This document shows, in pieces, positions 6,681 to 58,584 of a stretch of DNA of 64,000 nt. Both the position numbers and the translations under genes were made by a program. The notes beneath the pieces are model-generated. The model made no database searches, was not told the origin of the DNA, and saw only the letters and a list, made by a program, of their open reading frames with translations. The stretch's first letter is position 1. The number at the start of each line of letters is the position of its first letter. The stretch covers positions 3,090,689 through 3,154,688 of the forward strand of contig CM074809.1 in the NCBI GenBank assembly GCA_037447605.1, in the 5' to 3' direction. The stretch comes from Zygnema circumcarinatum SAG 698-1b (Eukaryota > Plantae > Zygnematophyceae).

Positions 6681-9600
6681 TTACGTCGCTTTCCGAGAGT
6701 GTTTCCAGAGATGAAAAGCAGCCAGCACAATCATCCCCGTGCATAGAACGCCCCCGGAAAAGACTACTACGGCTTTCAGATTCTCTCGCCGCAATTCTGA
6801 TTTGAGTTCTATGTACGAAGTGTCACTGTCTATGTCAATCTGCTTAGGCCTGCACAGAGAGGCACTCCCAAAATCATGTTAGAAAGAATACACCACACTA
6901 AAAAGCCCTTTCTATCTCGACATGCCAACGGCAAAAACATTGGTTTCACTCGAAAACTCAGAAAAAGGGTTCACAAAACCTGCATTGTACTGTTGAGTCA
7001 AGAATAACAATGAGCCCTCTTGCAATGCAAAAAGAGGACAAGTACGAATTCACTATTGAAAAAAAATTACAAAAGAGAATCGAAAGACAAAACATAGAAA
7101 CCAAAACTACGGATCTGATAGCGAAAGTGTAGCCTTGACACAAGAACAGGAATAGATACAACAAGTAAATGCTCTGCTTTTCTTGGCCTCACGTTGATGG
7201 CAGATGCTTCGAATAGAGCACTCCTGAAAGAGTGACATTTATCAGAAAGTCATATATCCAACTTTCCCTTTCGGGCTGTCCAGGAATCCGGGCCGGCTGT
7301 GAAGATAGACCTAAATAGACGTATTCTGAAGAAAGCCTATATTATAGACCCTAGACTCATAGAATACTAGCCCTTAGCTCTGAGTGTAAACCCAACATAG
7401 GTAAGAGAAGGTCTGATTCTTCATCAACTACCGATATGTACAGCAAGTCACAAACTACATTCTACCGTTGATTACGAAACAATAAGGAAATATACTGTCG
7501 ATTAAATAGACCTAATAACTGTTCGTACTTATTCGATAACCTACACCTCTAAATTATTTGACGTCCGTAGGGAAGACCTTTGTAAATGGAGCCCTTTTTT
7601 GCCGAACCTTCAGAGAGGCCATGTTTTGGGGTATCACCAAAGAGTCGGAAGGCTCAGAATTTTTTGAAGATTTGACCATTCCAGTCACTCTTTGGCTGTA
7701 TCGAATGCTGCCCAGAGGAGGAAAATTGTTGAAAGCTGAGTTTTGTTCTCTTAATGGTGGAAGCAATCTTGAAAGCAAATAGAAAGTGCCTATAGATCCT
7801 CAAACTCCGGCTTATTTCTATCTTCAAGAAATTCTGACTACAAAACAAGTTTTTCCTAAATCCCAATAGAGGCTGCAATAGGTATTGAAGGTGCACTGTA
7901 TTACAGTAATAGTGAGGTGTATTGAAGGTGCAGGTGCAGTGTAGTTCCGTAATATTCAAAATCGAATGTCAGCTAGCTGCTTGAGGGGGTGTGCGAAGAA
8001 AAAGTGGAAGAAAGGGTGCCAAGAGAGAGAGACTGGGAAGGGAGAGGGGAAGCGAGAGGGGAAGGGAGAGGGGAAGGGAGAGGGGAAGGGAGAGGGGAAG
8101 GGAGAGGGGAAGGGAGGGGAGGAGAGGGGAAGGGGAAGGGTGGGGAGGGGAGAGGGTGTTCTATACAGAAAAGGGTAAGTGAACTCACCCCCACGAGGGT
8201 ACCACTTTTTGTGCCAACGAAAGAACTGTGAATCGGAATACCAGCTGAAGGGAGGAGGTTAGGGGTCTCAAACTCCCGGAAATGGATGCTTCCTCTAACA
8301 GCTCCCTCAATGCATCTAGTTCCGGTTTCCGCTCCACAGTGAACTGCGATAAAGCCTTTGGAATAGCAGAAGATAACTCATCTTTTCCAATAGCCACTTC
8401 TAGCACCTGTGCCCCCCTCTCTCCCGCAACCAGTCACGTGTGAACGTAAGTTAATCAACTTGTTAATGCAAGCCGATGGATTAGCAACAGCTCAACAAAG
8501 GTCCAAGGAGAAGGACCATAAATTGTAGCTAAGTCTGATGGGGTATTGACCTGGTCAAGCAAATCACAGTCTTCCAGAGCAGCATTGCATCCTTCTCCAA
8601 AGGTGCCCGGCAAGGAGTGTGCGGCATCTCCAATAAGGACCACCTTCCCCGAGTGAAAGCGAGAGCAAGTGATGCTTATTCCAGAAACCCATTTTTCTTT
8701 TGCAACAATGTCAGCAAATTGCCGATTATCTTGCGTGTACAGCTTAAGAAGCTCCGGAAACTCGCTTCTGCAAAACCAGATGAGACCGTCTTGAGACATG
8801 TTTGAGGTTCCCTGCATCGCATAAACTTGCAGATGTGCAGTTACACGAGTGATGTTTAAGGGAGAATCGCTCACTCCATGAATGCCGTCACGTCGTCGCT
8901 GTAAGTTAACATTTGCGCTCGAAGTCGTCGGGTAGTAGGAATATTCAATATTCCGTAGAAGCATCCGTCAGATTTCGGAATCCCCATAATGAGAGCTCCA
9001 GTTTTGCTAGTGAAGAGTTGAATTCCGTGAGCATTTCCAAGCATGTCAGATTTCCGAACTTGGTCCGCAGAGAGGGGAGGCAATTGCTTGTACTTGCTTG
9101 CAAGGCTCTTTTGAACAAAGGCATGTCTGCATAGCAAAGATGGAATTTGTCCAAAAGTGCGGTCAAAATCGATGCAAACCCAGTATGTTTCGAGTGCCTA
9201 ACCAAAAACCTCGGAGGGGAGGGGTAAGCTCATGGCAATGCTTTGCGAGAAACAAATTGATTCCTTTGAGTATGCAGAACAACTTGTCGAGGGGAGATTA
9301 GCGAGACATTTCAAATGGCTGGACAGACGATAACACTTGTCGGACAGAGAACAAAGATACTCTTCAGCATGAGTGCAGAATTTAACCAAGCGTTCAGTTG
9401 GAAAACCAGGGGGAAACACACGAAAAAGGGCAAGGAGCGAGCGGACGGACGTGAGAGGGGGCCGAAAAGCAGCAAAAAGGTAAGGGGAGGAGGAGAGAGC
9501 GCGTAAGCGAGAAAGAGAAAGCAAAGCCGCAACAACTGTGAGAATGTGACATTCGAAAAGTTCTTTTCCAACCACTCTCTCCCACCTTTCATGCTTAGAC

Positions 9601-10208
9601 CCGCCCTTCTCCGCATCCATCCGAACCAGTTCATCGCGCACAGTGCTGACAGTCCCATCCGCCGCCACGAGTAGGTCATAGCCCTGCAGGTCCATGCGGT
9701 CTTCAGGACCCTCCTTCAGATCTCTCATTCCAGCCACCAGCCTCTGCTCAGTCTCCTCGGTTCGACTTCTTGTTCTTCGAAACCGTGCAACCTCCCCTTC
9801 ATCCTCCAAAGCATAGAGAGTCCAGCCCATATGAACCCTAATTCTGCTCGACTTATGATTCTGCGCTTCCTGAAGCAGAAAATTTGCAAGTTCATTCCTT
9901 CCCACTGCCGACTTTGGCTGAGAGGCATCAAATGCCTGAAAATTCTTCGTTCCGCCACCATGTACGCTGAAGCCCTTGAGAGGAAGCGCCAAATCTGGAG
10001 GCAGCTCAAGGCCTGCTTGTCTGAGCGCCTTTAAAGCCCGAATATTCAGCACATATACAGGCGTTTTCTTTTCGCTGAGAATAGAAAAGTCTGGAATCCG
10101 TTCTACCAAGTCGACACGAAACCCGCGATTTGCGAGAAAGATCGACATAAGCGATCCTGCCGGACCCGCACCCACCACCACGGCTGAAGGGCTGTTCTGT
10201 TGATCCAT
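6681..10208 (-). CDS. FAD-dependent monooxygenase, kynurenine 3-monooxygenase-like, with C-terminal membrane anchor
   Basis: Contains the Rossmann motif VVVGAGPAG, YDLLVAADG, and VVLIGDAAHSLPGTFGEGCNAALEDC. The exon ending ...VPSW(gg) near 8190 splices in phase to a terminal exon at 6681-6849 (PKQIDIDSDTSY...AVVVFSGGVLCTGMIVLAAFHLWKHSRKAT*). Confidence 0.85.
8035..8150. repeat. Purine-rich 12-bp tandem repeat (GGGAGAGGGGAA)n in an intron
   Basis: About 6-8 copies read directly; it explains the GEGK/PSPL ORFs in the track. Confidence 0.8.
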
Positions 10209-11384
10209 GGATGTCAAAATATTTGAAGAAGGCCCTGCACAGACAAGTAATGCATTTCGACTGAGTTCCCGGTGAAAAAGGAAGTCTTCTGAACAACTCC
10301 TTAAAAGAAAGCTCATGACACGCAGTTTATGCAAAAAAAAATAACAAATTGAACGAGCTGCAGGGTAGCAATACTGAGGTGTGGCAAACTAACAGAGTGG
10401 GAGCAACTGCCTGGTCCGAAACAAAGAGTTGGTTTCATAACGTTAAGAAAGAAAAGGGACTGCTTGTCGAATAGTAAAGGAAAACATAGAAGAGATTTTA
10501 TGGCTCAATTTGCTCAATATACTCAAGCCCTCACGACTCACGTCATCAAGAAAAGAGCCTTTCATTATGCATCACATCACTCTCTTTCCTCTTTCCTATT
10601 CTTTTTACGTTCCTTCACTCACTCCCCTAAGCTCCCTTCCAGCACTTTTATCCCTTCAAGTAACACTTTCTTCCAAAAAGCAAGCTTACTCATACCGGCT
10701 AGCCTCTGCCTTCTCCATTATTATTCCTTCACCTCCTTACCCTCTCACTTCCCTCCCTCCCCGACCTACTCGAACACTGCCTTCCCTCACTCACACATGC
10801 CAACCCCCTCCCTCCTTTAACACCAAATTCAACGCAAAAACCTCCCCTTCGCCCTCAATCTCACCTCTCCGAGGACGTGGACGCAAATAAAACCTCAGCA
10901 CCCGTCACTCGTCCCCCTTCCTCCTCCTCCCCCTCCCCCTCCTCCTCCGTTGCCGCTCCCCTCTCCCCTTCCATGGTGCCGCCCTCTCCCTCTTCAAAGG
11001 CCTCCTCCCCTCCAAGTGGGCGCCATCCAAAGGGCCCTTCTCATCCGTACATCCATGGTCATTCCGTACACCCGTGACCATTTCTTACACTTTCCGCACT
11101 GTACCGTGTCGTACGAAATTGCGACTTCGCCGTTCGCACATAGAATCAGCTGCAGCAGTTACGGAGCTGCCCGCGGGCAGCAGGAAAATGAAATCTTTCT
11201 GCCACGTGGCGAGCGCTGCCGCTCCCTGCCACGAGGAGGACAGCGGCCGGCGGGCGGGGCAGGGCAGAGGGCAGCCATGGCCATGGCGGGGGCGGGGGTC
11301 TTCCTAAGGACGTTGCTGCGGAGGCCGAGAGGCGCCATGCCGGCGGAGAGTTAGGGTTTTCCAGGGGCGGGGAGACGACGGCTG

Positions 11385-29597: not shown

Positions 29598-32500
29598 ATG
29601 ATCAAGGCATCTCCTGCACCTCTCTCGGAGTATGAGCGCCAGCGTGCTCTCAATATTGCACGAAATGAGCACATATTGAACGCCTTGGGAGTGATAGATG
29701 CAGCCAAGGAGGTGAAAGCAGCCTTGCCTGCCGCGAGAAAGAGGGAACAGTGAGTGTGCTGATCAACCTCTACTCTTAAATGAGGAAACATATACATCGT
29801 TAACTGCACCTTTGCTGTCAGGATGTATATCAGGCTTTAGAACGTTTAAGGTGTTCCAGCACTTCAAAAGTAAACAAATTATATCAGAGTATATAGAATG
29901 AGTTGCACTGTGTTGTTCTTTTTTTAACGTTGGAGCACATTGAAGTATTTGGGTCAGTAGGAGGTTGTATAATTTAAAAATGTTCCTAATTGGAACGAAT
30001 AGTCTCTGGTTTTCATTGGAATTCGCGGGTTTTGCATGCAGTGCGCTTCCGAAACAGCCTCGTCTGAAGAAGCAAAAGGGGCTCGAACCTGTTCGTCGAT
30101 CTTTGAGAGTTCGGGGTTTGTCTCCGAGCGGTGAACAAGCAGAATCTGAGAGCAGGACAGGGACGAGCAGCGGAAGTGGAGCAGGTGATGCAAAAAAGCA
30201 GAAGAGAGACCCAAGCATTCACAATGATGAGCTTCTCAAATTGCTTGAGAGGCTTCGGGACATCCAGCGAATGAAAGATCGTAGAAGACGAAGTGTCACC
30301 AAAAATATCGGCACTGATACAGAAACGGCGACTGGAGGAGATAACAATTTAAGCGTCGTCTGTGACTTTAAGGCTCTACAACTTGACGAAGAGCACGTGG
30401 CCAAGGTGCTGAAAGAGCGCATTTTCTCTGTCACATTCCTGCCTCTACGGTAAGCTGAATGCTTACATTGCATGCTCGCTATGGTGCAAATAGGGCAAAG
30501 CGAGTATGAATGATCCCTGCACTTTCAGTGTACCTTCGTCGTATCCGCTATGAGGATTGTTCAGGATCCTTCAGGCAGGAGAATAAGGAATTGGCATTGA
30601 ACTCACGATGGCATCAAATATATATGGATAAGAACAACATGGAGAATAGTGACATTGAGAATCAGACATTCTCCGTTCTTGACTATTGACAGCCAGGTTT
30701 TGGATCACTTTTACTCCTTGTCAAGCCAAGTCAATCTCATGCTTATAATACAAAACTTTAACTACCTTTCCAAAAGGGCATGTAATGTGCCTTTCAGACA
30801 AACTGGAGTAAGGTCCTATTTCCCACTCTTTTTTCTGTCTCTTCCTTTTTTTTTTATTCTTTTCCCTTTTAGAATCGTCTTTGGGCAGATATCGAAAGAT
30901 CGTCGCAGCTGGGGATAAAGCTGGCCACATCTGCTTGTGGGATGTCGCTCAAGAAGAAGGCAAGACAGAGCAGCCGAGCGGTGGAACCTATGACTTTGCG
31001 GTGCACGAGAAGCCTGTCTCGGGACTCGCCTGTGGACCCAACGACGCCACAAAGGTATGCGGCACAGCTGAAGAGTGCAGCCACGGGTATGAATAAATAA
31101 TAATAAAATAATATTAATAATAATAATGATAGTAATAATGGGTATGAATAGCTATCTCTGCTTGTGATAAAAACCCTATTTTAAACAGCATGCAGACATA
31201 GGAAGATGGTTGGACATGGTTAAAGCAAGGAAGTGGGCAAGGCGAAGTATGTGGAGAGCGAGCAGCGCTCAGGGCCCTTGCTATATTAGTCACGTTGTAT
31301 TGCGAGATTTTAGAATGGTCGAAAGGAGCTTATTGGTACGTCCAGGTTTGTCAACCAGTAAATGTGGCTGTCCCTGCCTCGAGATGTGTTTAGGGCTTCG
31401 AAAGCAAGCATTGGCAGCCAATAGTTGAACAGATTCACTGTGATCTAACAGCAAGCAGGCAGCGCTTCAGTGATTGAATTTCTTGTCCTTCTCACATTCA
31501 TTCATGGATGCATGTTCCTCAATCACTTTTGTCTCGTTTGTCTCAAACCTGAAATTTGCTATCTCCTTGGCAAGTAGTTACGGTTTGGTGATCATTTGCT
31601 CAAAATGCTTTTAAGCACAGTTCCGTTGGTCAGCTTTTTGAAGAGTGTAGGAGAAGGTCTTTCATATTGTAGCAGGCTTTCCTCTTTATCCGAGTTCGGT
31701 TGACTGATGTGCCCTTCATCCTCGCTCATGGTTAAGAAGCGTGCTTTGACTGGATTAGGGCTGCCTTTGTGCTTCTTGCAGCTTTACTCCTGTTCATATG
31801 ATGGAAGCCTCTACGTATTGGACATTGATCGCTCCATTTTCGACAATATCCATAGCGACAAAGACGTCAAATACACGGCCTGTGCATTGGCTCCTTCCAA
31901 CTTCAACGCTCTTTACTTGGCAGATGCCGAAGGGGGTCTGGCTATAGTTGACATAAAAAGCAAGAAGACTATTGGGCGACATGACATTCATGGAACGAAG
32001 GTCACAAGCATCGATTTTCATCCATACAATGATCGGCTTGTAGCTACGAGTTCCATTGATACCACGGTCTGTCTATGGGACACAAGGAAATTAGGGACTC
32101 AGAGAGGCAGGAAACATTCGGTGAGTGAATTGGCGACCTTGAACCATGCAAGGGGAGTACATTCCGCGTACTTTTCCCCAGATGGAAACCAGCTTGCATC
32201 GACAAGGTGGGCATTCACATTCACTGTTGTGTCAGACACCGGATTTGAGCATTGCCATTGATATTCGTTGGTTTTGAGTCAATTCCTCCTTGATTGGAAA
32301 GGAAAATCTTCAAGATTCTGGTTGTGGTTGGTGCCTAGGTGATAGCTTTCCTTCAGAGCAATTTCCTTTTCAGCCTCTAGTTTTTGCCTGCCAGATAATA
32401 TGCAGGGACGAGGTTTTTAGCCGTGTAAGTTAATGCTCGTTTACTTTCGTGAACTGCAGCTACGATGGCTTTATCAGAGTCTGGAAAGGTGTGACTTCGA

Positions 32501-42746: not shown

Positions 42747-43182
42747 AGTCAAAAGCAGCCTTTGACCCCTTCGCGCCTTCTTGAGCGAAGCAGAAGACGT
42801 GGCTCTCGCCAGTGCGCACCCTCCGAAGCAGGCCATGCCGGGGAGAGGGAGGGAGGGGACGCGGCATGGCGGGGCATGGCGGAGGCTCCTGCCGTGGCTC
42901 GCTGTATATCCCTTCTGAGGAATCTCGAGCGAGGAACCGTGGGAAAGCAGAAGCTTAGAGCAGTTGCAAGCAAGATGTTTGCACGCGCAGACTCGCAGGG
43001 CTTTTCGAGGTTAAGCACGCTTTGCATTTCGCATACGAGTGGTTGGATGACTAGCTGGACATTTCATCGGGGAAACGTGTCAGGTGCAACGTTCAGCATG
43101 CAGGAATGCCGCTGCACCCTGGGAAGCCTATGCAGTCAGGCTTTGACCCCTGCGTTGACCTTCCCGTTGGAGGAAATTATAA
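42747..43182 (+). promoter_or_regulatory. Promoter of poly-Arg precursor gene: four W-boxes, ABRE-like cores and a TATA box
   Basis: AGTCAA at 42747, TTGACC at 42762, 43143 and 43155; GACGTGGC near 42796; AACGTGTC near 43073; TATAA at 43178-43182, about 119 nt before the ATG. Confidence 0.55.
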
Positions 43183-43296
43183 GACGGGGGGGGTGGGAGA
43201 GAGGACGGTGGAGGGGGGCGCCTTGGGAGGCCAATCCCTGTCCCTTTCCTTGGAAGGCGGGTTTGGTTCTGAAGGGAGAGAGGAACGGACTCGAAA

Positions 43297-43732
43297 ATGG
43301 CGAAGGGGAGGAGGTCCACAACTCTGAGAGGGCTTGCAGTGTTAGGGTTTTTGTTTGTATGGGGCGGATGGCTGGCTTCTGCACGTGTGAATCCTGATGC
43401 TGACAACAGCGGCCATGTGGCTGTGCTTGATGCGAAGCCGAGTGACGGCCACGGCGGGGTCGATGCTGCTGTGAGCAAAGCTGATGCCAAGGAGCGGCGA
43501 GATGAAGGCCATGGACTGAACGAGGCCAGCGATCAGCCACAAGGCGAGCAAGTGGACACATTATTTGGAGGTCGCGATCGCGGTTTCAGTCATGGTTACG
43601 GCGCTTACGGTCCTTGGCGCAGTCGTTTTGGGCGCAGTCCCCATAATGATGTGCAGGAAGTTGATGGGAGCATGCATTTGGATGACGACAGCAACATGTT
43701 AGATGACGTCGACATGGACCAAACTGAGCCTG

Positions 43733-43764
<32 letters not shown>

Positions 43765-44769
43765 TTCCGTCGCCGCCGTCGTCGTGATGCTGTGGAGGAT
43801 GATAAGGGTAAAGAGCTGGTGGACGAGAGCAGAGAAGAAAGTGATGTTGCCGGTGAGTTGGATGACGTTGCGAGTGACTGGGATGGAGTGGGGGACGCTG
43901 AGGATGAGCACATGGACCAAGAGGGAGGTGGGGGTCGCCGCCGCCGCCGTCGTCGTCGCCGCCGCCGCCGCCGCCGTGATGCTGTGGAAGATGGTGGGGG
44001 TAAGGAGCTGGTGGATGAGAGCAGAGAAGAAAGTGATGCTGCTAGTGAGTTGGATGATGTTGCGAGTGGATTTGATGGAGTGGGAGACGCTGAGGATGAG
44101 CACATGGACCAAGAGGGAGGTGGGGGTCGCCGCCGCCGCCGTCGTCGTCGCCGCCGCCGCCGCCGTGATGCTGTGGAGGATGGTGAGGGTAAGGAGCTGG
44201 TGGATGAGAGCAGAGAAGAAAGTGATGCTGCTAGTGAGTTGGATGATGTTGCGAGTGGATTTGATGGAGTGGGAGACGCTGAGGATGAGCACATGGACCA
44301 AGAGGGAGGTGGGGGTCGCCGCCGCCGCCGTCGTCGTCGCCGCCGCCGCCGCCGTGATGCTGTGGAGGATGGTGAGGGTAAAGAGCTGGTGGATGAGAGC
44401 AGAGAAGAAAGTGATGTTGCCGGTGAGTTGGATGACGTTGCGAGTGACTGGGATGGAGTGGGGGACGCTGAGGATGAGCACATGGACCAAGAGGGAGGTG
44501 GGGGTCGCCGCCGCAGCCGTCGTCGTCGCCGCCGCCGCCGCCGTGATGCTGTGGAGGATGGTGAGGGTAAGGAGCTGGTGGATGAGAGCAGAGAAGAAAG
44601 TGATGCTGCTAGTGAGTTGGATGATGTTGCGAGTGGATTTGATGGAGTGGGAGACGCTGAGGATGAGCACATGGACCAAGAGGGAGGTGGGGGTCGCCGC
44701 CGCCGCCGTCGTCGTCGCCGCCGCCGTCGCCGTGATGGAGTCGAGAGTGTGGATGGACGGAAGGACTAG
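43297..44769 (+). CDS. Secreted tandem-repeat precursor A: acidic spacers plus six poly-arginine cores; intronless
   Basis: 490-aa ORF with signal peptide MAKGRRSTTLRGLAVLGFLFVWGGWLASA. Five 63-64 aa units (189-192 bp) start at 43786, 43978, 44167, 44356 and 44545. Cores in order: R10FR6, R14, R13, R13, R3SR9, R13. The N-terminus is homologous to the gene at 51000-52553. Confidence 0.85.
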
Positions 44770-47265: not shown

Positions 47266-48039
47266 CTAGACACTGGCTTGGTAGCCCTTCTCCTCGAACC
47301 TTTCTTCACCGGACTTCTCCATTGTGGAATGACCACCCTTGCTCCGACCTGCAAGAGGTCTCCCATCTCCCACCCAAGCAATGAAGTCAAACTGACTTTT
47401 ATTGGAAAATGAAGCGAGGCAAATCTAGAACTCTTGACGATCTAGATTCAAATAAAGTATAACAGCAGCAGAACAACCGAAACGTTTCAATTTGTTTGCT
47501 TATTTTGTACGTGTTCCAAGTAGGGGAAGAAGCTAAACAAGAAGACGATAGCCTTTTCCACTCGCCAAAGAGTTGAAGTTATTGAACTGCACCTTCTGCA
47601 AGATGGATTTGGGCCTCGAGTGACTTGCCACCAGTGCCGCCCTTTACCACTGTTTCTCCGGACGCCACACGCTCCTCTAGCTCCTGCGGAAAACAAAAGG
47701 CAAAGAACTTCTAATGTTGCGTTTAGCGGACCTGTTTTATAGGTTGTTAGCACTCGTGCAGCCGGAGTTTACACGGTTTCGAGGCAATAACCAAAAAATT
47801 GAATCCCAGATCGTTATCACTGAAAAGACTCCCAATATATTAAAGCTGCTTCACCATGCTTGTAATATTATACTGAAAGAAATGAAAAGACGAAATAAGC
47901 ATACGGTATCAGACTCGAGCATCAACATAGTACTGCATGCCAGTATGTGGGAAAACCTTCACACCTTGCGCTTCTCTGGGTCCTTTGCCTGCTCCTTCAC
48001 CTCCTCAACAGACTGCAGAGTTTCTGTCATCTCAGCCAT
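47266..48039 (-). CDS. Em-like LEA group 1 (LEA_5) protein lacking the 20-mer repeat
   Basis: Exons 48039-47965 (75 nt), 47683-47593 (91 nt) and 47348-47266 give [82 protein letters not shown]. Confidence 0.88.
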
Positions 48040-48661
48040 GGCGTTCCTTCAACCAGAGAAAGCTATCTCCAACAACTGGCTGGTTTCTTTCTATTTTTCT
48101 TGCTAGCAGCTCTCTACTCCAACCTGCAAAGACCGAAACTGGAAAGCCTCAAAACTGGACATATCGCACTTCCAGTTACCCTTATTAACCTTCTGGCAGC
48201 TGTGAGGAAGCAGCTCTCGTCAGGCGCATGGCATGCAAGCGCAATCGAATGACGAAGCTTTCGCTCTTGCAGGAAGCAATTGGTTTAGGCGCTGCATGGG
48301 ATTGCTGACATGTCCATGCGCTACGCGGCCTCTGGGAAGTGCTTCTTTTCTTGCCACCTGGCCGGAGTCCCTATGGATGTACTGTATGCAAACAGGTTTG
48401 AACAGTTATAAGCATAGCGTACATGTCGAGGCGGGTTTTTAAAAAGCCTGGGCTTTCAAGAGCGTGGCAGATGTGCGAAGCTTTTAGCAACCTAATTGCT
48501 TACTGGGATGCGTCATCTTGGTCAAAAGTGAAGGCTACCAATCGTAAAGGCGAAGTGGATATCTTTCTGTTCACATTGCTGTTCTTCACCGGGTGAAGAT
48601 AACCCAACAGTATTCCTTTGCGGAGATAATGACAAGAGGCATTCTTGAAGCGAGTTTATCG
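48040..48661. promoter_or_regulatory. Divergent promoter between two Em genes, with RY motifs
   Basis: CATGCA at 48232, TGCATG at 48293, GCGTGGC near 48462, and GCCACCTGGC near 48352 (also present near 55845 upstream of another Em gene). Confidence 0.4.
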
Positions 48662-49782
48662 ATGGCTGCAGCTTTGAATGCCTGTAGCTATTTCACTAAC
48701 ACCGCTCGTTCAATAATTCCAAGAATAAATGCGTTTGTCTGCCCCCAAGTTGAACCTGCAGGAGTTCTCACCAGGTTTGCCTCAAAGAAAACCGATACCA
48801 CGGCCTTCCAGCATTCTGTGAATGAGGTGAAGGAGATGATGCAGGACCCGAAAGAGCTGAAGGTATGGGAATTCAGTGTTGCAACCAAGTTCAGACATAG
48901 TAACATAGAAAATCATGGACCATAGATACAAGCGCATGGCTTCGATAGTAAGAACAGCGACAAAATTTGAAGTATGTGAGAGTATGGCGGGGAGTAGCAC
49001 TTGATCAAATCAAGTAACGATTGAAATTTTGATTATGGCTGTAATTCAATCTAACACAATACTCGTTCGTCAATAAATCTTCGCTTATCCATTGACATTG
49101 TGTTACCGGCCCACTTTGGATTCTGCAGAACCTTGAGAAACTTGTGCAGGAAGGAAAGACGGTGGTGAAGGGTGGCACTGGCGGAAAGACGCTCGATGCA
49201 CAAATACGGCTGGCTGAAGGTGCTCCGCCTGCCCCTCACTCTCTGGTGTGTTTAACTTCGTGTGCACGAGTCTGGCTTTAAGTGACCTTGGGCTGATTAC
49301 CTTTCGCAATGGTTCCACAAACGAGTTATATCGTTTTGCAGCTGCAACCATTACTCATGCACGTCGGAATTTGAAGAGCAGCTCTGGACGTTCTTGTAAT
49401 CTTGACCTAGCGATACACAAGAATCACATTGCTTGATCAATGATTTTGCGACTGGGGAGTCTACTCTTGCCAGTGCAGCCAAGTCGTGTACGTTTGGTAA
49501 ATCGCAATTGTGTTTATCGAAACAACAAACAAAATTGTACATTTTAAAGTCCGTTGTGTTGAGCTGAGTTTGCTGAACATCAGAGAAGCGCTTCGATTGT
49601 GGGTAGGAAGAAGCCGGGGAGGCCATGCCCACTCGGAGTCTGGGTCTAAAGATTCAGAGGTTGGAAAGAAGGGAGGTGAGGCCCGTACAAAGGAGCTGGG
49701 GCCCGAAGGTTATGCAGACCTGGGGAAGAAGGGGGGGAAGGCTCGGGCGGACGAGCTCAATCCAGAAGATATTCAGAAATAG
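48662..49782 (+). CDS. Em-like LEA group 1 protein with N-terminal transit-peptide-like extension
   Basis: Exons 48662-48862, 49129-49219 (91 nt) and 49607-49782 give [103 protein letters not shown]...KKGGEARTKELGPEGYADLGKKGGKARADELNPEDIQK*. An alternative start exists at 48629. Confidence 0.82.
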
Positions 49783-50999: not shown

Positions 51000-52553
51000 T
51001 CAAGGCAGACTTGTGTTTCGAACACTATCCTCTATGTCATTACGGGAATACTTTCCCTTCTTGTACTTCTTCGACTTCTTGCCATCATCCAGCTCCTGGC
51101 TCTCATCTTCCAGCCCTTCGCTGTCCTCGCCTTCTACGCTATTCTCCACCTCCGTATTGTCACGAGGGTACTTCTTTCCCTTCTTGTGCTTCTTCGACTT
51201 CTTGCCATCATCCAGCTCCTGGCTCTCATCTTCCAGCCCTTCGCTGTCCTCGCCTTCTACGCTATTCTCCACCTCCGTATTGTCACGAGGGTACTTCTTT
51301 CCCTTCTTGGACTTCTTCCACTTCTTGCCATCATCCAGCTCCTGGCTCTCATCTTCCAGCCCTTCGCTGTCCTCGCCTTCTACGCTATTCTCCACCTCCG
51401 TATTGTCACGAGGGTACTTCTTTCCCTTCTTGTGCTTCTTCGACTTCTTGCCATCATCCAGCTCCTGGCTCTCATCTTCCAGCCCTTCGCTGTCCTCGCC
51501 TTCTACGCTATTCTCCACCTCCGTATTGTCACGAGGGTACTTCTTTCCCTTCTTGGACTTCTTCCACTTCTTGCCATCATCCAGCTCCTGGCTCTCATCT
51601 TCCAGCCCTTCGCTGTCCTCGCCTTCTACGCTATTCTCCACCTCCGTATTGTCACGAGGGTACTTCTTTCCCTTCTTGGACTTCTTCCACTTCTTGCCAT
51701 CATCCAGCTCCTGGCTCTCATCTTCCAGCCCTTCGCTGTCCTCGCCTTCTACGCTATTCTCCACCTCCGTATTGTCACGAGGGTACTTCTTTCCCTTCTT
51801 GTGCTTCTTCGACTTCTTGCCATCATCCAGCTCCTGGCTCTCATCTTCCAGCCCTTCGCTGTCCTCGCCTTCTACGCTATTCTCCACCTCCGTATTGTCA
51901 CGAGGGTACTTCTTTCCCTTCTTGGACTTCTTCCACTTCTTGCCATCATCCAGCTCCTGGCTCTCATCTTCCAGCCCTTCGCTGTCCTCGCCTTCTACGC
52001 TATTCTCCACCTCCGTATTGTCACGAGGGTACTTCTTTCCCTTCTTGGACTTCTTCCACTTCTTGCCATCATCCAGCTCCTGGCTCTCATCTTCCAGCCC
52101 TTCGCTGTCCTCGCCTTCTACGCTATTCTCCACCTCCGTATTGTCACGAGGGTACTTCTTTCCCTTCTTGGACTTCTTCCACTTCTTGCCATCATCCAGC
52201 TCCTGGCTCTCATTTTCCAGCCCTTCGCTGTCCTCGCCTTCTACGCTATTCTCCACCTCCGTATTGTCACGAGGGTACTTCTTTCCCTTCTTGTACTTCT
52301 TCCACTTCTTGCCATCATCCAGCTCCTGGCTCTCATCTCCCAAGCCCTTCTGGTCGACCTCCGCAACGTCCAAAGTGCTCTTGCCAGCATCCGCAGCAAC
52401 ATCGAGCCCAACCGTTGCATCCAGGACAGCCGCGTGACCGCTGCCATCATCCGCGGGAGCCATGCGTGCGGAAGCCAGCCATGTTCCCCACACTAGCGCA
52501 AACCCTAGTACTGCAAGCGCTCGTACAGCTGAGAAACTATTCACCTTTCCCAT
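51000..52553 (-). CDS. Secreted tandem-repeat precursor B: acidic spacers plus eleven Lys-rich cores; intronless
   Basis: Likely start MGKVNSFSAVRALAVLGFALVWGTWLASA at 52553. The 41-aa (123-bp) unit is GKKxKKxKKGKKYPR plus DNTEVENSVEGEDSEGLEDESQELDD. There are 11 cores, the last being GKKSKKYKKGKYSR. It is a paralogue of 43297-44769. Confidence 0.87.
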   Translation of the reverse strand: MGKVNSFSAVRALAVLGFALVWGTWLASARMAPADDGSGHAAVLDATVGLDVAADAGKSTLDVAEVDQKGLGDESQELDDGKKWKKYKKGKKYPRDNTEVENSVEGEDSEGLENESQELDDGKKWKKSKKGKKYPRDNTEVENSVEGEDSEGLEDESQELDDGKKWKKSKKGKKYPRDNTEVENSVEGEDSEGLEDESQELDDGKKWKKSKKGKKYPRDNTEVENSVEGEDSEGLEDESQELDDGKKSKKHKKGKKYPRDNTEVENSVEGEDSEGLEDESQELDDGKKWKKSKKGKKYPRDNTEVENSVEGEDSEGLEDESQELDDGKKWKKSKKGKKYPRDNTEVENSVEGEDSEGLEDESQELDDGKKSKKHKKGKKYPRDNTEVENSVEGEDSEGLEDESQELDDGKKWKKSKKGKKYPRDNTEVENSVEGEDSEGLEDESQELDDGKKSKKHKKGKKYPRDNTEVENSVEGEDSEGLEDESQELDDGKKSKKYKKGKYSRNDIEDSVRNTSLP

Positions 52554-52635: not shown

Positions 52636-52681
52636 TTTATACCTCGCCTTCCTCTCCATTGCCACAGTCAAAGTTTGACTG
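52636..52681 (-). promoter_or_regulatory. Promoter of Lys-rich precursor gene: TATA box plus palindromic double W-box
   Basis: TATAAA on the minus strand at 52641-52636. Perfect palindrome CAGTCAAA-G-TTTGACTG at 52665-52681 contains two TTGACT. A further TTGACC lies at 52983 and GACGTGGC near 53050. Confidence 0.58.
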
Positions 52682-54654: not shown

Positions 54655-55584
54655 TTAGGTATTCCTATATTTGGACTCGTCGATCTCAATGCCCTTCTCT
54701 GCAGCTGCTTCTCCGCCGGACTTATCGAGAGTGGAGAGGCCGCCCTTCCTCCCCATTTCCGCATACCCTTCCGAGCCCAACTCTTCAGCACGAGATTGGC
54801 CGCCTTTGCTTCGTCCTGCTAAGTACAAACGGGAAACAACACAGACAGTGGATCAAAGAACCGTCAAACAGATGAAAGAGTTGGAAATACTTTTCCAGCT
54901 TTAAGTGCCTACGGCAAAGTATAAACTGCGAATTATCTTTACGAGCGATGTTTTCGCAGTATGGCAGGATTAGCACGAAAGGACTAGCACATACAAGGCA
55001 AGAAGAGAAAACTAAATTGAAATCTTGACACTTGTGACTATTTCCCTATCATACCTTCGGCCAGGTGAACTTGAGCCTCGAGCGACTTTCCTCCAGTGCC
55101 ACCTTTCACGACCGTCTCACCCTCTTTTACCTTCTGCTCCAGTTCCTGGATAGCCACCAGACCATTTGAACGCAGAAAACGTAAGCACATACTTCCATAA
55201 TGGTTCACTCGGAAAAGTCACGGGGGTGAAAATACGCTTCAAACATAAGTAAGAAAAAGGACATTCGCAACACCGGGAAAGTGCCACAGACACGAAAAGG
55301 GTGCACACATGAGTCACTGCTTCTATCAAGAAGAAAGAAACATTAAAGACAGAAAAACTCGACCACACATACTTGAACACTAAAAAAAGCCCGTACATCG
55401 CAGAGTCTCACAAGGAACTGACAGTGCTCCCACACATAATTCTAGTAGTACACACGGTCCATGCAATTTGAAAAAAATCAGGCTGCATATCGCAAGATTC
55501 GTGCCAAACCTCGCGCTGCTCCTCATCCTTCATTTTCTCTTTGACCTCCTGCACAGCCTGCTCAGTTGCAGTCTTCTGCGCCAT
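54655..55584 (-). CDS. Em-like LEA group 1 (LEA_5) protein
   Basis: Exons 55584-55510, 55145-55055 and 54815-54655 give [108 protein letters not shown]. Confidence 0.93.
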
Positions 55585-55814
55585 CTCTCCCAAACCTCCT
55601 TGCAATTTCACCTCTTGCTCTAGCGGCTGAACGGACCTCTGAAAGAGAGAAGCGGAAAATATGACCTAAAACAAAGGAAAAAAACTACCAGGCTCTCCTT
55701 CCTTTTCCCTCCCCTTCTTTCTCTTCCTTCTTCCCCTTCCCTTCCCTTCCAGTAGTGGCCGAAACAGGACTGCATTCTGGAAACGGGTCTCAACAAAGAA
55801 AAAAAACGAGGCGC

Positions 55815-56033
55815 CATGCATTCCTGAGGTGCTGCCACGAGTCAGCCACCTGGCGCAATACAAGCACGTCGTGTCACCCGCTCTTGTCTGCACTCCGCGG
55901 CGCGGAGCCTGGCGGCCATGGCTGGAGGCTGCCAGAACAGAGCCTGCATGGCCCTTGCCACGCCTTGTGCCACGTGACCCAAGCCACACACCCTTACAAG
56001 CCTCCGACCGCCATGCCGCCTTGAGGACGTGGC
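55815..56033. promoter_or_regulatory. ABRE/G-box and RY motifs upstream of an Em gene
   Basis: CATGCA at 55815, TGCATG at 55945, CACGTG at 55971 and GACGTGGC near 56026. Confidence 0.5.
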
Positions 56034-57606
56034 GGGAAAGCAGTGGCCGACAGAGCTTCGCCGCCATGGCCGCCTCCACTGCTGCCAGGCGCCGCCGCGT
56101 AGCTTTACTGTTCTATGAGCTGCTGTAATACGAAACCGTACGGTATTACGGGATACATGCTCCCCGCAGTTTACACGGTAAAGACGATTTTTGCTGTGGG
56201 ATTCAACGGTTCTCAGTTGGTTCAACCGTTGGCTGCACCCAACCATTGGACTACCAATCATTGGAAAACAGTGGTCTGCCCAACGGTTGGTAATTTGTGC
56301 AATTTCCGTCCAGAGTGCCCAACTGCCCATCCCATTCTGTCCGTACAGCTACAACTCGCCGCCTCCTAACATTCCCAAACCCCAAACCCCATGTTTTAGT
56401 TTCCACTAGGAGCTGTGGGATCAATGTAGTCGACGATACCCTGCACATGGCAATGCATCAAAGGGAGCAATGTTTCGTTAAGTGGGTTAGAGAGGTAGGG
56501 AGCAGGGAAGGTTTGAGAAGAATGCCTCACCCCCATTGGACCGTCAAAGTGTGGCTCTTTGCTAGTGAAAAACCAAGTTTTATTCCACCAGGCTCTGTTT
56601 CAACCCAAAGTGAGTCGAAATTTTCTTAGTGTTTGAAGGGGTACTTGGCAGAAATAAAATTAGAAAAGACCCTCCTGCCTTCTCGTCTGAAACGATGTAA
56701 AGGGTCCTTCCATCTGGAATGTTTTTTGTATGCAATACCTCCAGTATGCTACAGAAGCTTGAAAGGATTGGGGTCAGGAGTTGGGAGGGAAGGGCAGAGT
56801 GGTAAGGGAGACGAAACAAGGGGAGACGAAACAAGGGTGCAGCAGGAGAGGGATGGAGCCGGAGGCCATTGGAGGAGGCTTGTAAGAAAAACGAAAGCGA
56901 GTTAAAAGAGGACAGAGAAAAGCAAGAAGAAGAAGAAGAGTCGCAGAGAATTCGATATCGCTCACGATTCGCTTTGGTTAGATCAAATCATCAGATTATT
57001 TTTGGAAAAGTTTACAAGTTTACAAGTTTCAGGATTCAATCTTCGCACTTTTGTCTGAATTCTTCGTTACTGAAAGCGACGGTCCTCGATCAGCAAGTCC
57101 ATTTGCTCAAAATGTCTCAATGAATGGACACATAATTCACGGTTAAAATTTGAGTGACTTCTTGAGAATAACAGTACGTAGTTGCACAAAAAAAGGCAAG
57201 GGACTGCCATCACAACTGAAGAGCAACTGAAGAACAACAGCATCTAACGCCTCAAAACACATTCACAACAAAACCAACTTAAAGAGGCATTTACGTAAAC
57301 GCAACCACTCTAAAAATGAGTATGTCCAAATATAGCATGAAGCAGCACAGCATGCTAAGTCTTTACGTTCTTAAAGCATCCAAACTCACATTATTATGTC
57401 GTTATGCACTTGAATTTTACAACATAAGAATCTCAAACTGGTTTCACGAGAAACAGACATGCCGTTCATATACGACTCTTATACCCCAAAATTGTGCCTG
57501 GAGAGACTGGACACATCTTGTCAATGTCCACTGGTGTCGCATAAAAATTCCTTTACTCTGTCACAACTTGCAAAGTGAAAGAAAGCAAAGCTCTACGCTG
57601 CCCATA

Positions 57607-58584
57607 TTAGACGTTCTTGTATTTGGACTCGTCGATTTCAATGCCCTTCTCTGCAGCAGCTTCAACACCTGACTTGTCCAGGGTCGAAAGGCCTCCCTTC
57701 ATCCCCATTTCAGAGTATCCTTCGTGGCCCAATTCTTCAGCACGAGCATGCCCACCCTTGGTACCGCCTTTGCTTCTTCCTGCAAGTTCATGTTTTACAC
57801 TGCAGTCAAGAACTTCCATTCATAATGCTTACGTTTTCTCATAGAAACCCAATTTTGAGAAAAGGTCCATACAATGCACTGCACTGCATTGCACTGGTCA
57901 TGCTTTCCCTCTCTGCAGCCATTCCCGACTCATCATGTAAAGTCAATTGAAGCCTGCTTTTCTGCAAGTGATCCAAAATTTTCCCGACAGTATTCAAATA
58001 GCTATCTCTGATGTTACTACGCACTTGACAGATGGAATTTCACAAAAACATATCTATCCTCTATGCGGCACATACCTTCTGCCAAGTGAACCTGAGCCTC
58101 TAAAGACTTTCCACCGGTGCCGCCCTTCACCACAGTTTCACCCTCGCGAACACGTTCCTCCAATTCCTATTTTCAGACAAAGCAACTTAGCTAACAAACG
58201 AAGCCTCCAAAATTGCAATTCCAAAAAACGGGAAAGGACATGCTACTTTACATCCGCAGTCTAAGCAATTGAATCCTATAGTTCTCAGACTCCTTTTGTA
58301 TGCAAGCCAGACCGTTCCTTTGCTACGCAAAATAAATTCATATCAAAAAACAGCTCTACATCAGAGGCAGACCGTAGTAGACCGTTTTGATCATAACAAG
58401 CGGTGAATGGAAAGCAATCATATTTTTATTGCAAATAATACCCTTCAGACGACATCGTCGCCAAAGGCAGCACTGCCATCAAAGGATCTCACATCTCATT
58501 GATAGGTACCTTTCGCTCCTCAGGGTCCTTCATAGCCTCTTTCACTTCCTCGACAGACTCCTGAGTCGCAGAGTTCTGAGACAT
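57607..58584 (-). CDS. Em-like LEA group 1 (LEA_5) protein
   Basis: Exons 58584-58510, 58166-58076 and 57779-57607 give [112 protein letters not shown]. Confidence 0.93.

What the first reader, a model, noticed from the sequence alone, without database searches (positions are those of the whole stretch)
43567..44769. Poly-arginine cores (R13-R16) in a secreted protein, plus a distinct Gly/Tyr/Arg lead peptide
Seen: six near-pure Arg runs, encoded only by CGC/CGT. Before them is a separate basic, aromatic segment, GGRDRGFSHGYGAYGPWRSRFGRSPHN (43567-43647), between acidic stretches. Established: oligoarginines of 8 or more residues are potent cell-penetrating and membrane-active peptides; natural poly-Arg is mainly known from nuclear protamines, not secreted proteins. 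Inference: one precursor may yield two product types, an AMP-like lead peptide and natural oligoarginines.
Basis: partly seen in the sequence, partly recalled or inferred. Interest (0 to 1): 0.75.

Follow-up and report, generated by a model that had tools for sequence, protein, structure and literature searches.

The report
Secreted protein with poly-arginine blocks
A green alga close to land plants carries an intact gene for an export-tagged, floppy protein in which six runs of 13-16 arginines alternate with long acidic stretches; runs this long are not known from exported proteins, but whether the protein is cut into free arginine peptides is untested.

Summary
Window 43297-44769 (+) is one 490-codon ORF. 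It has a signal peptide, an acidic N-region holding the Gly/Tyr/Arg segment (43567-43647), and six Arg tracts: R10-F-R6, R14, R13, R13, R3-S-R9, R13. All 81 tract Arg codons are CGC or CGT. Each tract (+12 to +16) is followed by a 50-residue acidic spacer (-17 to -19).

This frame is the one under constraint. A convergent paralogue 6 kb away (51000-52553, -) shares the signal peptide and the first 18 mature residues. Its array is different: a Lys-rich core (+9) with an acidic spacer (-13). Both genes have paired W-boxes just upstream of a TATA box and are interleaved with four Em/LEA genes.

No relatives appeared in Pfam, PDB, the word search, a 1.84-billion-protein phmmer scan or metagenomes. 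No fold is predicted.

Best reading (0.4): a self-masked polycation precursor of defence or dormancy type. The main rival (0.3) is that it works uncut as a charge-block polyampholyte. The "lead peptide" as a second product is unsupported, because the paralogue lacks it. No expression or cleavage data could be obtained.

The scan already holds first-reader notes on this window and a follow-up on an acidic/His-Arg repeat orphan 431 kb away in the same genome.

The parts
43143..43160 (+). Pair of W-boxes (TTGACC at 43143-43148 and 43155-43160), 17-34 bp upstream of a TATA-like box
   Evidence: Only 4 close W-box pairs occur in the 64 kb, and 3 of them lie upstream of P1 or P2.
43177..43183 (+). 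TATA-like box (TTATAAG), about 115 bp upstream of the ATG
   Evidence: read from the sequence.
43297..44769 (+). P1 coding sequence: 490 codons plus stop, with no interruption
   Evidence: It is the only frame open through the N-terminal region. dN/dS is 0.375 against the paralogue and 0.29 between spacer types.
43297..43383 (+). Signal peptide, residues 1-29, with predicted cleavage after A-S-A
   Evidence: Read from the sequence. It is conserved in P2 and modelled as a helix at residues 9-27.
43384..43437 (+). Conserved start of the mature protein (R-x-x-P ... S-G-H-x-A-V-L-D-A), shared with P2
   Evidence: Over the first 47 residues, signal peptide included, 28 are identical.
43567..43647 (+).
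   Evidence: It is absent from P2.
43735..43785 (+). Arg tract 1: R10-F-R6 (12 CGT, 4 CGC)
43786..43935 (+). Acidic spacer 1 (50 aa, net -18, type A), ending in G4
43936..43977 (+). Arg tract 2: R14
43978..44127 (+). Acidic spacer 2 (type B, net -17)
44128..44166 (+). Arg tract 3: R13
44167..44316 (+). Acidic spacer 3 (type B, net -18), identical in DNA to spacer 5
44317..44355 (+). Arg tract 4: R13
44356..44505 (+). Acidic spacer 4 (type A, net -19)
44506..44544 (+). Arg tract 5: R3-S-R9 (the Ser codon is AGC)
44545..44694 (+). Acidic spacer 5 (type B, net -18)
44695..44733 (+). Arg tract 6: R13, followed by an 11-residue tail and the stop codon
51000..52553 (-). P2 paralogue, 517 aa: same signal peptide and mature N-terminus, then 10.6 copies of a 41-aa unit with a Lys-rich core (+9) and an acidic spacer (-13). 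All 90 Lys codons are AAG.
52636..52680 (-). P2 promoter: TATA box (52636-52641) and an inverted W-box pair (52666-52671, 52675-52680)
47585..49752 (.). Two Em/LEA group-1-like genes between P1 and P2: exon matches at 47585-47686 (-) and at 49114-49221 plus 49669-49752 (+)
   Evidence: tblastn with the Em exons of the window
54658..58166 (-). Two further Em/LEA group-1-like genes beyond P2 (54658-55208 and 57610-58166), each with one intron

Best explanation
P1 is a real, intronless gene of a streptophyte alga. It encodes an export-tagged, cysteine-free, intrinsically disordered repeat protein. Each oligo-arginine core (+12 to +16) sits next to a longer acidic spacer (-17 to -19), so the polycation is electrostatically masked and each unit has a net charge of about -2 to -6. 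P1 and its neighbour P2 form a small, fast-evolving family with a conserved leader and interchangeable cationic cores. I infer that the protein is a pro-form. It would travel the secretory pathway harmlessly and be stored or released outside the cytosol (wall, mucilage or vacuole). Proteolysis at the core/spacer borders would then free the polycationic cores, which bind polyanionic surfaces such as microbial envelopes, nucleic acids or acidic polysaccharides. The paired W-boxes and the position among Em/LEA genes suggest expression in a stress, defence or dormancy programme, much as seeds store antimicrobial peptides alongside LEA proteins. Shown: the gene structure, reading frame, leader, charge architecture, paralogy, promoter motifs and neighbourhood. 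Inferred: secretion, masking, cleavage, the activity of the cores and the timing of expression.
For: The ORF and tracts are. Frame: only frame 1 is open through the N-terminus of both paralogues. dN/dS is 0.375 for the N-termini; between spacer types it is 0.29 in frame 1 against 1.17 in frame 2. The leader and mature N-terminus are conserved (28/47 identical, E 7e-16), while the repeat arrays are unrelated in sequence (spacer similarity p=0.11). Both arrays keep the same design: fraction of charged residues 0.51 in both, and charge segregation kappa 0.47 and 0.45 against 0.16 +/- 0.02 for shuffles. A conserved signal peptide and acidic propiece with a hypervariable cationic part and balanced charges is the described pattern of frog antimicrobial-peptide genes (PMC7106915). 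Several basic peptides from one transcript are known in plants, as with Ib-AMPs (PMC4695807). A polyanion masking an oligo-arginine until a linker is cut is the working principle of synthetic activatable cell-penetrating peptides (PMC3694763). Three of the four close W-box pairs in the 64 kb lie upstream of these two genes. The codon choice in the cores departs from local usage: 81/81 CGY and 90/90 AAG, against 10/35 and 24/38 in reference exons. This fits a sequence that must be translated through tracts known to stall ribosomes at about 10 residues (bioRxiv 10.64898/2025.12.19.695406). There is no fold: pLDDT 47, pTM 0.22.
Against: No transcript, peptide or localisation data could be obtained. 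The species is barely represented in the protein collections: a conserved neighbouring exon finds nothing above 65% identity. No known processing motif flanks the cores. They are simply preceded by Gly and followed by Asp, which composition alone would often give. A dibasic-specific protease would shred a poly-Arg core rather than release it. Pure R13 is not amphipathic and resembles no natural antimicrobial peptide. The spacers over-compensate the cores by 2-6 charges per unit, more than masking requires. The units are recent copies, so the constraint estimates rest on few substitutions. The W-box and LEA-neighbourhood arguments are circumstantial and fit abiotic stress equally well.
Confidence: 0.4

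Rival explanations
1. The protein works uncut, as a block polyampholyte. Alternating positive and negative blocks make the chain bind itself and its neighbours into a coacervate or gel. Alternatively, the blocks cross-link acidic wall or mucilage polysaccharides directly through the Arg/Lys blocks and through Ca2+ at the acidic blocks. This would form a hydrated protective or structural matrix outside the plasma membrane during drying or dormancy, an extracellular counterpart of the cytosolic Em/LEA proteins encoded around it.
For: The charge blockiness is extreme and is the only property of the arrays that the two paralogues share (kappa 0.47 and 0.45 against 0.16 for shuffles; fraction of charged residues 0.51 in both). 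Their repeat sequences are not demonstrably related. Alternating charge blocks are sufficient to drive phase separation of disordered repeat domains (PMC9106583). The genes are interleaved with four Em/LEA genes. No fold is predicted and there is no processing motif.
Against: Net charges of -25 (P1) and -43 (P2) work against self-coacervation unless counter-ions neutralise them. A conserved leader with freely exchangeable cationic cores is more typical of peptide precursors. LEA neighbours are cytosolic proteins, and sharing a neighbourhood does not mean sharing a mechanism.
Confidence: 0.3
2. The basic tracts are not the products. They are oversized cleavage or linker sites, or counter-ions, and the acidic 50-residue segments are the functional parts: high-capacity Ca2+/Ba2+/Sr2+ binders in the secretory pathway or vacuole, as in luminal histidine-rich Ca-binding proteins or acidic biomineral matrix proteins.
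For: The only lead from the protein-language-model atlas was a plant cluster auto-named 'sarcoplasmic reticulum histidine-rich calcium-binding protein-like' (score 0.78). The spacers are the longer part and are under purifying selection (dN/dS 0.29). They carry S-x-E motifs that could be phosphorylated (read from the sequence). From my own knowledge, runs of basic residues are classical prohormone cleavage sites.
Against: An atlas score of 0.78 is within the range that shuffled proteins reach. P2 gave no atlas hit. The P2 core contains W, Y, P, S and G and looks like a peptide, not a cleavage site. Thirteen arginines are far more than any site needs, and they would neutralise much of the cation-binding capacity.
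Confidence: 0.1
3. It is a young, rapidly expanding repeat ORF with little or no function. It might be untranslated, translated at trace level, or translated in another frame. The poly-Arg tracts would then be a by-product of (CGY)n slippage and unit duplication.
For: All six frames are open across the array (ORFs of 355, 399 and 379 aa). The units are up to 100% identical. No homologue exists anywhere searched. No expression evidence was found. Tracts of about 10 or more Arg are reported to stall ribosomes (bioRxiv 10.64898/2025.12.19.695406).
Against: Only frame 1 continues 435 nt upstream of the repeats, into unique sequence with an ATG and a signal peptide that is conserved in a second gene with dN/dS 0.375. 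The other frames have stops there. Both paralogues keep long open arrays with the same charge design. All tract-length changes preserve the frame. The synonymous variation within tracts is confined to CGC/CGT. Both genes have TATA boxes with paired W-boxes.
Confidence: 0.1
4. It is a nitrogen-rich reserve protein of resting cells. It would be deposited through the secretory pathway like seed storage proteins and degraded at germination.
For: Arg makes up 20% of residues (98 of 490). The protein has a secretory leader, lies among Em/LEA genes typical of maturation programmes, and has rapidly evolving repeats as in many storage proteins (own knowledge).
Against: The paralogue replaces Arg with the less nitrogen-rich Lys while keeping the charge pattern, so charge rather than nitrogen is the conserved property. 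Acidic residues outnumber Arg.
Confidence: 0.05

Closest known systems
Multi-copy cationic antimicrobial-peptide precursors (plant Ib-AMP polyprotein; frog skin peptide precursors)
   Same: A signal peptide is followed by cationic segments separated from or preceded by acidic pro-segments that balance their charge. Several basic peptides come from one transcript (PMC4695807). The leader is conserved while the cationic part is hypervariable between paralogues (PMC7106915).
   Different: There is no sequence similarity. P1 has no cysteines, whereas Ib-AMPs have four. The cores are near-pure homopolymers, not amphipathic peptides. No known processing site is present. Neither cleavage nor activity has been shown.
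Activatable cell-penetrating peptides (synthetic polyglutamate-linker-oligoarginine hairpins)
   Same: An oligo-arginine of CPP length is placed next to a polyanionic segment that neutralises it until the two are separated (PMC3694763).
   Different: Those are man-made single hairpins with a designed protease linker. Here six masked units are genetically encoded in tandem and no linker site is evident.
Charge-block disordered repeat domains (for example the Ki-67 repeat domain)
   Same: Tandem repeats act as diblock ampholytes. Function resides in the blockiness, not in exact sequence (PMC9106583).
   Different: Those are nuclear, phosphorylation-tuned and use mixed K/R blocks of 30-40 residues. 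P1 is export-tagged, its positive block is a 13-17-residue homopolymer, and no phase behaviour has been measured.
Protamines
   Same: They carry very Arg-rich tracts that bind polyanions.
   Different: Protamine tracts are about 6 residues long (bioRxiv 10.64898/2025.12.19.695406). Protamines are small, nuclear, net basic and lack a signal peptide. P1 is 490 aa, net acidic (pI 5.1) and has a leader.
Diatom silaffin precursor Sil1p
   Same: The layout is a signal peptide, an acidic N-terminal domain and a repetitive basic C-terminal part cut into peptides. Its Lys clusters resemble the P2 core (PMC4557024).
   Different: Sil1p repeats are not separated by acidic spacers and end in RXL-type motifs, which are absent here. 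There is no homology, and silica formation is not expected in this lineage.
Em / LEA group 1 proteins (the neighbours)
   Same: They are hydrophilic and disordered, and they lie in the same 19-kb cluster.
   Different: P1 has no LEA motif and no Pfam LEA match. Em proteins have no signal peptide and no charge blocks.

Membership tests
Multi-copy cationic AMP polyprotein precursors (Ib-AMP type) | N-terminal signal peptide | tested here: met
   By inspection: basic n-region, 15-residue hydrophobic core and A-S-A site. It is conserved in P2 and modelled as a helix at residues 9-27. No dedicated predictor was available.
Multi-copy cationic AMP polyprotein precursors (Ib-AMP type) | Repeated basic peptides separated by acidic propeptides | tested here: met
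   There are six cores of +12 to +16. The first five are each followed by a spacer of -17 to -19, and the sixth by an 11-residue tail. P2 has a core of +9 and a spacer of -13.
Multi-copy cationic AMP polyprotein precursors (Ib-AMP type) | Sequence homology or the Cys motif of the mature peptides | tested here: not met
   P1 has no Cys at all. There was no hit in Pfam, PDB or the protein searches.
Multi-copy cationic AMP polyprotein precursors (Ib-AMP type) | Proteolytic release of the peptides and antimicrobial activity | not testable with these tools
   This needs peptidomics and assays. No conserved processing motif is visible at the core borders.
Protamines / protamine-like proteins | Small, net-basic nuclear protein without a secretory leader | tested here: not met
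   P1 is 490 aa, its mature pI is 5.1 with net charge -25, and it has a signal peptide.
LEA proteins (Em, LEA_5 and other Pfam LEA families) | Match to a LEA family profile or motif | tested here: not met
   Pfam gave only sub-threshold chance hits (FLAD1_M, SPT6_acidic). The Em motifs are found in the neighbours, not in P1.
Histidine-rich Ca-binding protein (HRC)-like luminal proteins | His-rich/acidic repeats and detectable similarity | tested here: inconclusive
   The atlas feature score was 0.78 to a plant 'HRC-like' cluster, within chance range. P1 has only 11 His. P2 gave no hit.
Silaffin-type precursors | RXL-type processing motif at the end of each basic repeat | tested here: not met
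   The repeat units contain no R-x-L (translations). The only R-x-L lies inside the signal peptide.
Charge-block polyampholyte disordered proteins (a physical class, not a homology family) | High fraction of charged residues with strong segregation of opposite charges, and no fold | tested here: met
   The fraction of charged residues is 0.51 and kappa is 0.47, against 0.16 +/- 0.02 for shuffles. AlphaFold2 gave pLDDT 47 and pTM 0.22 (single sequence).

The most novel reading that the evidence does not exclude
This alga makes natural free oligo-arginines (about G4-R13) and Lys/Trp-rich peptides from tandem, self-masked precursors. That would be a genetically encoded, protease-activated polycation system: the natural counterpart of synthetic activatable cell-penetrating peptides. 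It would be deployed outside the cell under WRKY-type control during stress or dormancy.
Probability: 0.2. Interest if true: 0.85.

Novelty: new variant of a known kind. Interest (0 to 1): 0.6.

Why it matters
Homopolymeric arginine of 8 or more residues is used widely as a laboratory tool for cell entry, and tracts of about 10 are used as ribosome-stalling reporters. Natural tracts cited in the literature are about 6 residues long and nuclear. An intact gene under constraint that places six R13-R16 tracts behind a secretory leader raises three concrete questions. How does this alga translate and translocate such tracts? Does nature use charge masking to store a polycation? What is the polycation for? 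With its Lys-rich paralogue and a similar His/Arg gene noted 431 kb away, it may mark a lineage-specific class of secreted charge-block proteins in the closest algal relatives of land plants. These sit among desiccation (LEA) genes, which bears on how these algae survive drying and microbes. If it is only an uncut matrix protein or a young repeat ORF, it remains a curiosity.

Tried and rejected
- **Homology searches, all blank.**
  - Pfam on P1, its N-terminus and P2.
  - PDB sequences.
  - Word-indexed search of 5.8 billion proteins with the whole protein and with residues 1-140.
  - phmmer of residues 1-145 against 1.84 billion representatives. This gave two hits, both multi-stretch matches to unrelated repeat proteins (a 2849-aa Asp/Thr-rich repeat protein and a 1318-aa acidic repeat protein), which I rejected as compositional.
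  - Metagenome scan with the P1/P2 N-terminal alignment, and with an exact 26-mer from the spacer.
  - Exact-sequence look-ups of P1, P2 and two other ORFs of the window.
  - Rfam.
- **Coverage caveat.** A conserved neighbouring exon finds nothing closer than 65% identity. The species is therefore not covered, and the blanks say nothing about expression.
- **Protein atlas.** One weak lead for P1 and none for P2.
- **Are the P1 and P2 spacers homologous?** Not significant (p=0.11).
- **Is the 'lead' segment plus the acidic stretch after it a degenerate zeroth repeat unit?** Not significant (p=0.12). Only an 11-nt identity lies just before tract 1.
- **Twin-arginine (Tat) leader.** Rejected: the RR lies at residues 5-6 with no preceding transit peptide, and P2 lacks it.
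- **Protamine or nuclear reading.** Rejected because of the leader and the acidic net charge.
- **Bacterial promoter/terminator scan.** Irrelevant for a eukaryotic gene.
- **Organism.** I could not confirm it beyond 'plant-lineage genome with Em/LEA genes'. 'Closterium-like' comes from an earlier unchecked note.
Full report
**What is there**

Window 43297-44769 (+) is a single uninterrupted ORF of 490 codons.
- It starts with a basic n-region, a 15-residue hydrophobic core and an A-S-A site. I read this as a 29-residue signal peptide. AlphaFold2 models residues 9-27 as the only moderately confident helix.
- The mature part begins with about 115 mostly acidic residues (net -14).
It sits exactly at 43567-43647, has net charge +4, and lies between stretches of -7 and -11.
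- Six arginine tracts follow: R10-F-R6, R14, R13, R13, R3-S-R9 and R13 (coordinates under Parts).
- The first five tracts are each followed by a 50-residue spacer of net -17 to -19 that ends in four glycines. The last tract is followed by an 11-residue tail.
- Tandem Repeats Finder sees a 189-bp unit in 5.2 copies at 93% identity.
- The spacers come in two types arranged A-B-B-A-B, and spacers 3 and 5 are identical in DNA.
- The protein has no Cys and no Ile. It is 20% Arg and 27% Asp+Glu, and the mature pI is 5.1.

**Is the observation right, and is it more than chance?**

Yes. All 81 tract Arg codons are CGC (48) or CGT (33). Outside the tracts the gene uses all six Arg codons. In conserved exons of the same window only 10 of 35 Arg codons are CGY. 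(CGY)n tracts of five or more units occur nowhere else in the 64 kb.

The six tracts are not independent events. They arose by triplet expansion and then by duplication of whole units. All length differences between tracts are multiples of three.

**Which frame is real?**

The repeats leave all six frames open (ORFs of 355, 399 and 379 aa). These include an antisense frame that also reads poly-Arg. Three observations single out frame 1.
- It alone continues 435 nt upstream into unique sequence with an ATG and a leader. The other two forward frames have stops there in both paralogues.
- That N-terminus is conserved at protein level in a second gene (28 of 47 residues identical, E 7e-16), with dN/dS 0.375.
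- Between the two spacer types, dN/dS is 0.29 in frame 1 and 1.17 in frame 2.

The counts behind these ratios are small.

**The paralogue**

P2 lies on the minus strand at 51000-52553, convergent with P1 and 6.2 kb away. It encodes 517 residues. The signal peptide and the first 18 mature residues match P1. The array is different: a 123-bp unit in 10.6 copies at 98% identity. Each unit has a 15-residue Lys-rich core containing Trp, Tyr, Pro and Ser (+9) and a 26-residue acidic spacer (-13). All 90 Lys codons are AAG, against 24 of 38 in reference exons.

DNA similarity between the two genes is confined to the first 139 nt of the coding sequence. The spacers are no more alike than composition predicts (p=0.11).

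The physical parameters, however, coincide.

| Property | P1 | P2 | Shuffled sequences |
|---|---|---|---|
| Fraction of charged residues | 0.51 | 0.51 | n/a |
| Net charge per residue | -0.05 | -0.09 | n/a |
| Charge segregation (kappa) | 0.47 | 0.45 | 0.16 +/- 0.02 |

What the family conserves is the leader and the charge-block design, not the repeat sequence.

**Surroundings**

Four Em/LEA group-1-like genes are interleaved with the pair, at about 47.6 kb (-), 49.1-49.75 kb (+), 54.66-55.2 kb (-) and 57.6-58.2 kb (-).

Both P1 and P2 have a pair of W-boxes 17-40 bp upstream of a TATA or TATA-like box (43143-43160 with 43177-43183; 52666-52680 with 52636-52641). Only four such close pairs occur in the 64 kb, and three of them lie upstream of these two genes.

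These points confirm two first-reader notes on this window (s1-350977, s1-351001). From established plant biology, W-boxes are the binding sites of WRKY factors, which act in defence and abiotic-stress genes. That they act here is inference.

**Relatives**

None were found.
- Pfam gives only sub-threshold chance hits, and PDB sequences give nothing.
- The word-indexed search gives nothing for the whole protein or for residues 1-140.
- A full phmmer scan of 1.84 billion representatives with residues 1-145 returned two unrelated repeat proteins matched in many short stretches.
- Two metagenome scans were blank.
- The protein atlas gave one weak lead for P1 (score 0.78, a plant cluster auto-named histidine-rich Ca-binding-protein-like) and nothing for P2.

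An important caveat applies. A well-conserved FAD-monooxygenase exon of this window finds nothing closer than 65% identity, in Logan assemblies of runs SRR8128905, SRR8128906 and SRR8128908. This species is therefore essentially absent from the collections. The blanks show neither that the family is unique nor that it is unexpressed.

Earlier notes call the genome a streptophyte, 'Closterium-like' alga. I verified only that it is a plant-lineage genome with Em genes.

**Structure**

Single-sequence AlphaFold2 gives mean pLDDT 47 and pTM 0.22, with no domain. This agrees with intrinsic disorder, but a single-sequence model is weak evidence.

**How it most likely works**

The safest statement is physical. 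Each polycationic core is flanked by a longer polyanion, so the chain is self-neutralised and each unit has a net charge of about -2 to -6. Two mechanisms fit.

*(a) Masked precursor (0.4).* The acidic spacers keep the polycation harmless during synthesis and transport, and proteolysis frees the cores.
- Precedents:
  - the conserved leader, acidic propiece and hypervariable cationic peptide of frog antimicrobial genes, which keep their charges balanced (PMC7106915);
  - several basic peptides from one plant transcript (Ib-AMPs, PMC4695807);
  - the acidic N-domain and basic repeats of Sil1p, which are cut into peptides (PMC4557024);
  - the synthetic polyanion-linker-oligoarginine probes that become adhesive only after cleavage (PMC3694763).
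- The W-boxes and the LEA neighbourhood would place it in a defence or dormancy programme.
- Against it:
  - there is no processing motif;
  - a dibasic protease would shred R13;
  - R13 is unlike natural antimicrobial peptides;
  - there are no expression or peptide data.

*(b) Uncut block polyampholyte (0.3).* Alternating charge blocks suffice for phase separation of disordered repeat domains (PMC9106583). The only conserved array property is blockiness, and the neighbours are desiccation proteins. Against it, the sizeable net negative charge would hinder self-association.

Minor rivals are the acidic segments as the functional, metal-binding parts (0.1), a young non-functional repeat ORF (0.1) and a nitrogen reserve (0.05).

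**The 'lead peptide'**

It is real as sequence. It is single-copy, absent from P2 and unlike anything known. I tested whether it plus the following acidic stretch is a degenerate zeroth unit. The similarity is not significant (p=0.12). I see no support for a second product type.

**Translation**

Tracts of about 10 Arg or Lys are reported to stall ribosomes, natural protamine tracts are about 6 residues, and about 8 Arg suffice for membrane penetration (introduction of bioRxiv 10.64898/2025.12.19.695406). Six tracts of 13-16 Arg in one ORF are therefore unusual in themselves.

The exclusive use of CGC/CGT, and of AAG in P2, may reflect selection for smooth decoding or merely the slippage origin of the tracts. 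Within the tracts, the only synonymous variation is C/T at the third position.

**Novelty and verdict**

The design class (cationic cores with acidic spacers behind a leader) is known. Near-pure R13-R16 cores in an export-tagged protein, and the two-gene family among LEA genes, are new as far as my searches reach. The last literature search returned no paper from Zygnematophyceae.

The scan has already noted the same window (s1-350928, s1-350977, s1-351001) and followed up a like-designed acidic/His-Arg orphan 431 kb away (s1-372239). That report also found no proof of cleavage.

I rate this a new variant of a known kind, with interest 0.6.

Noticed in passing
window 51000-52553 (-): This is the Lys-rich paralogue P2. 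It has 10.6 copies of a 41-aa unit at 98% DNA identity, and all 90 Lys codons are AAG. Three other long ORFs on the opposite strand (563, 555 and 474 aa) are by-products of the stop-free repeat.
   Followed up: partly
window 47585-47686 (-), 49114-49752 (+), 54658-55208 (-), 57610-58166 (-): Four Em/LEA group-1-like genes, at least two of them with one intron, are interleaved with P1 and P2 over about 15 kb. The copy at 49.1-49.75 kb is the most divergent (57-67% identity to the reference exons).
   Followed up: partly
window 43143-43160, 52666-52680 and 42747-42767: These are closely spaced W-box pairs. Three of the four such pairs in the 64 kb lie upstream of P1 or P2, and the P2 pair is an inverted repeat (AGTCAA...TTGACT).
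   Followed up: partly
window 43605-44672 (-): An antisense ORF of 355 aa across the P1 array also reads poly-Arg (CGG/CGA-type codons), followed by Pro4 and Ser-rich stretches. Its start lies inside the repeat and it has no conserved N-terminus, so I take it for a by-product.
   Followed up: partly
window 43786-44694 and the P2 spacers: The spacers of both genes carry S-x-E motifs (S-R-E in P1; S-V-E and S-Q-E in P2). This is the consensus of secretory-pathway casein-type kinases in animals. Phosphorylation would make the spacers still more acidic.
   Followed up: no
window 8455-10334 (-): Exons of an FAD-dependent monooxygenase (Pfam FAD_binding_3) lie here. The best database hit is only 65% identical, from RNA assemblies of runs SRR8128905, SRR8128906 and SRR8128908, so this species is nearly absent from the protein collections.
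   Followed up: partly
window about 22560, 26400 and 27580: Purine-rich simple repeats of the GGGAGG type translate as G-R-E-G-G runs on the minus strand. They were seen while scanning for LEA motifs.
   Followed up: no
window 31707-32261 (+): An ORF with WD40 repeats (Pfam WD40, E 3e-12) is probably one exon of a larger beta-propeller gene.
   Followed up: no
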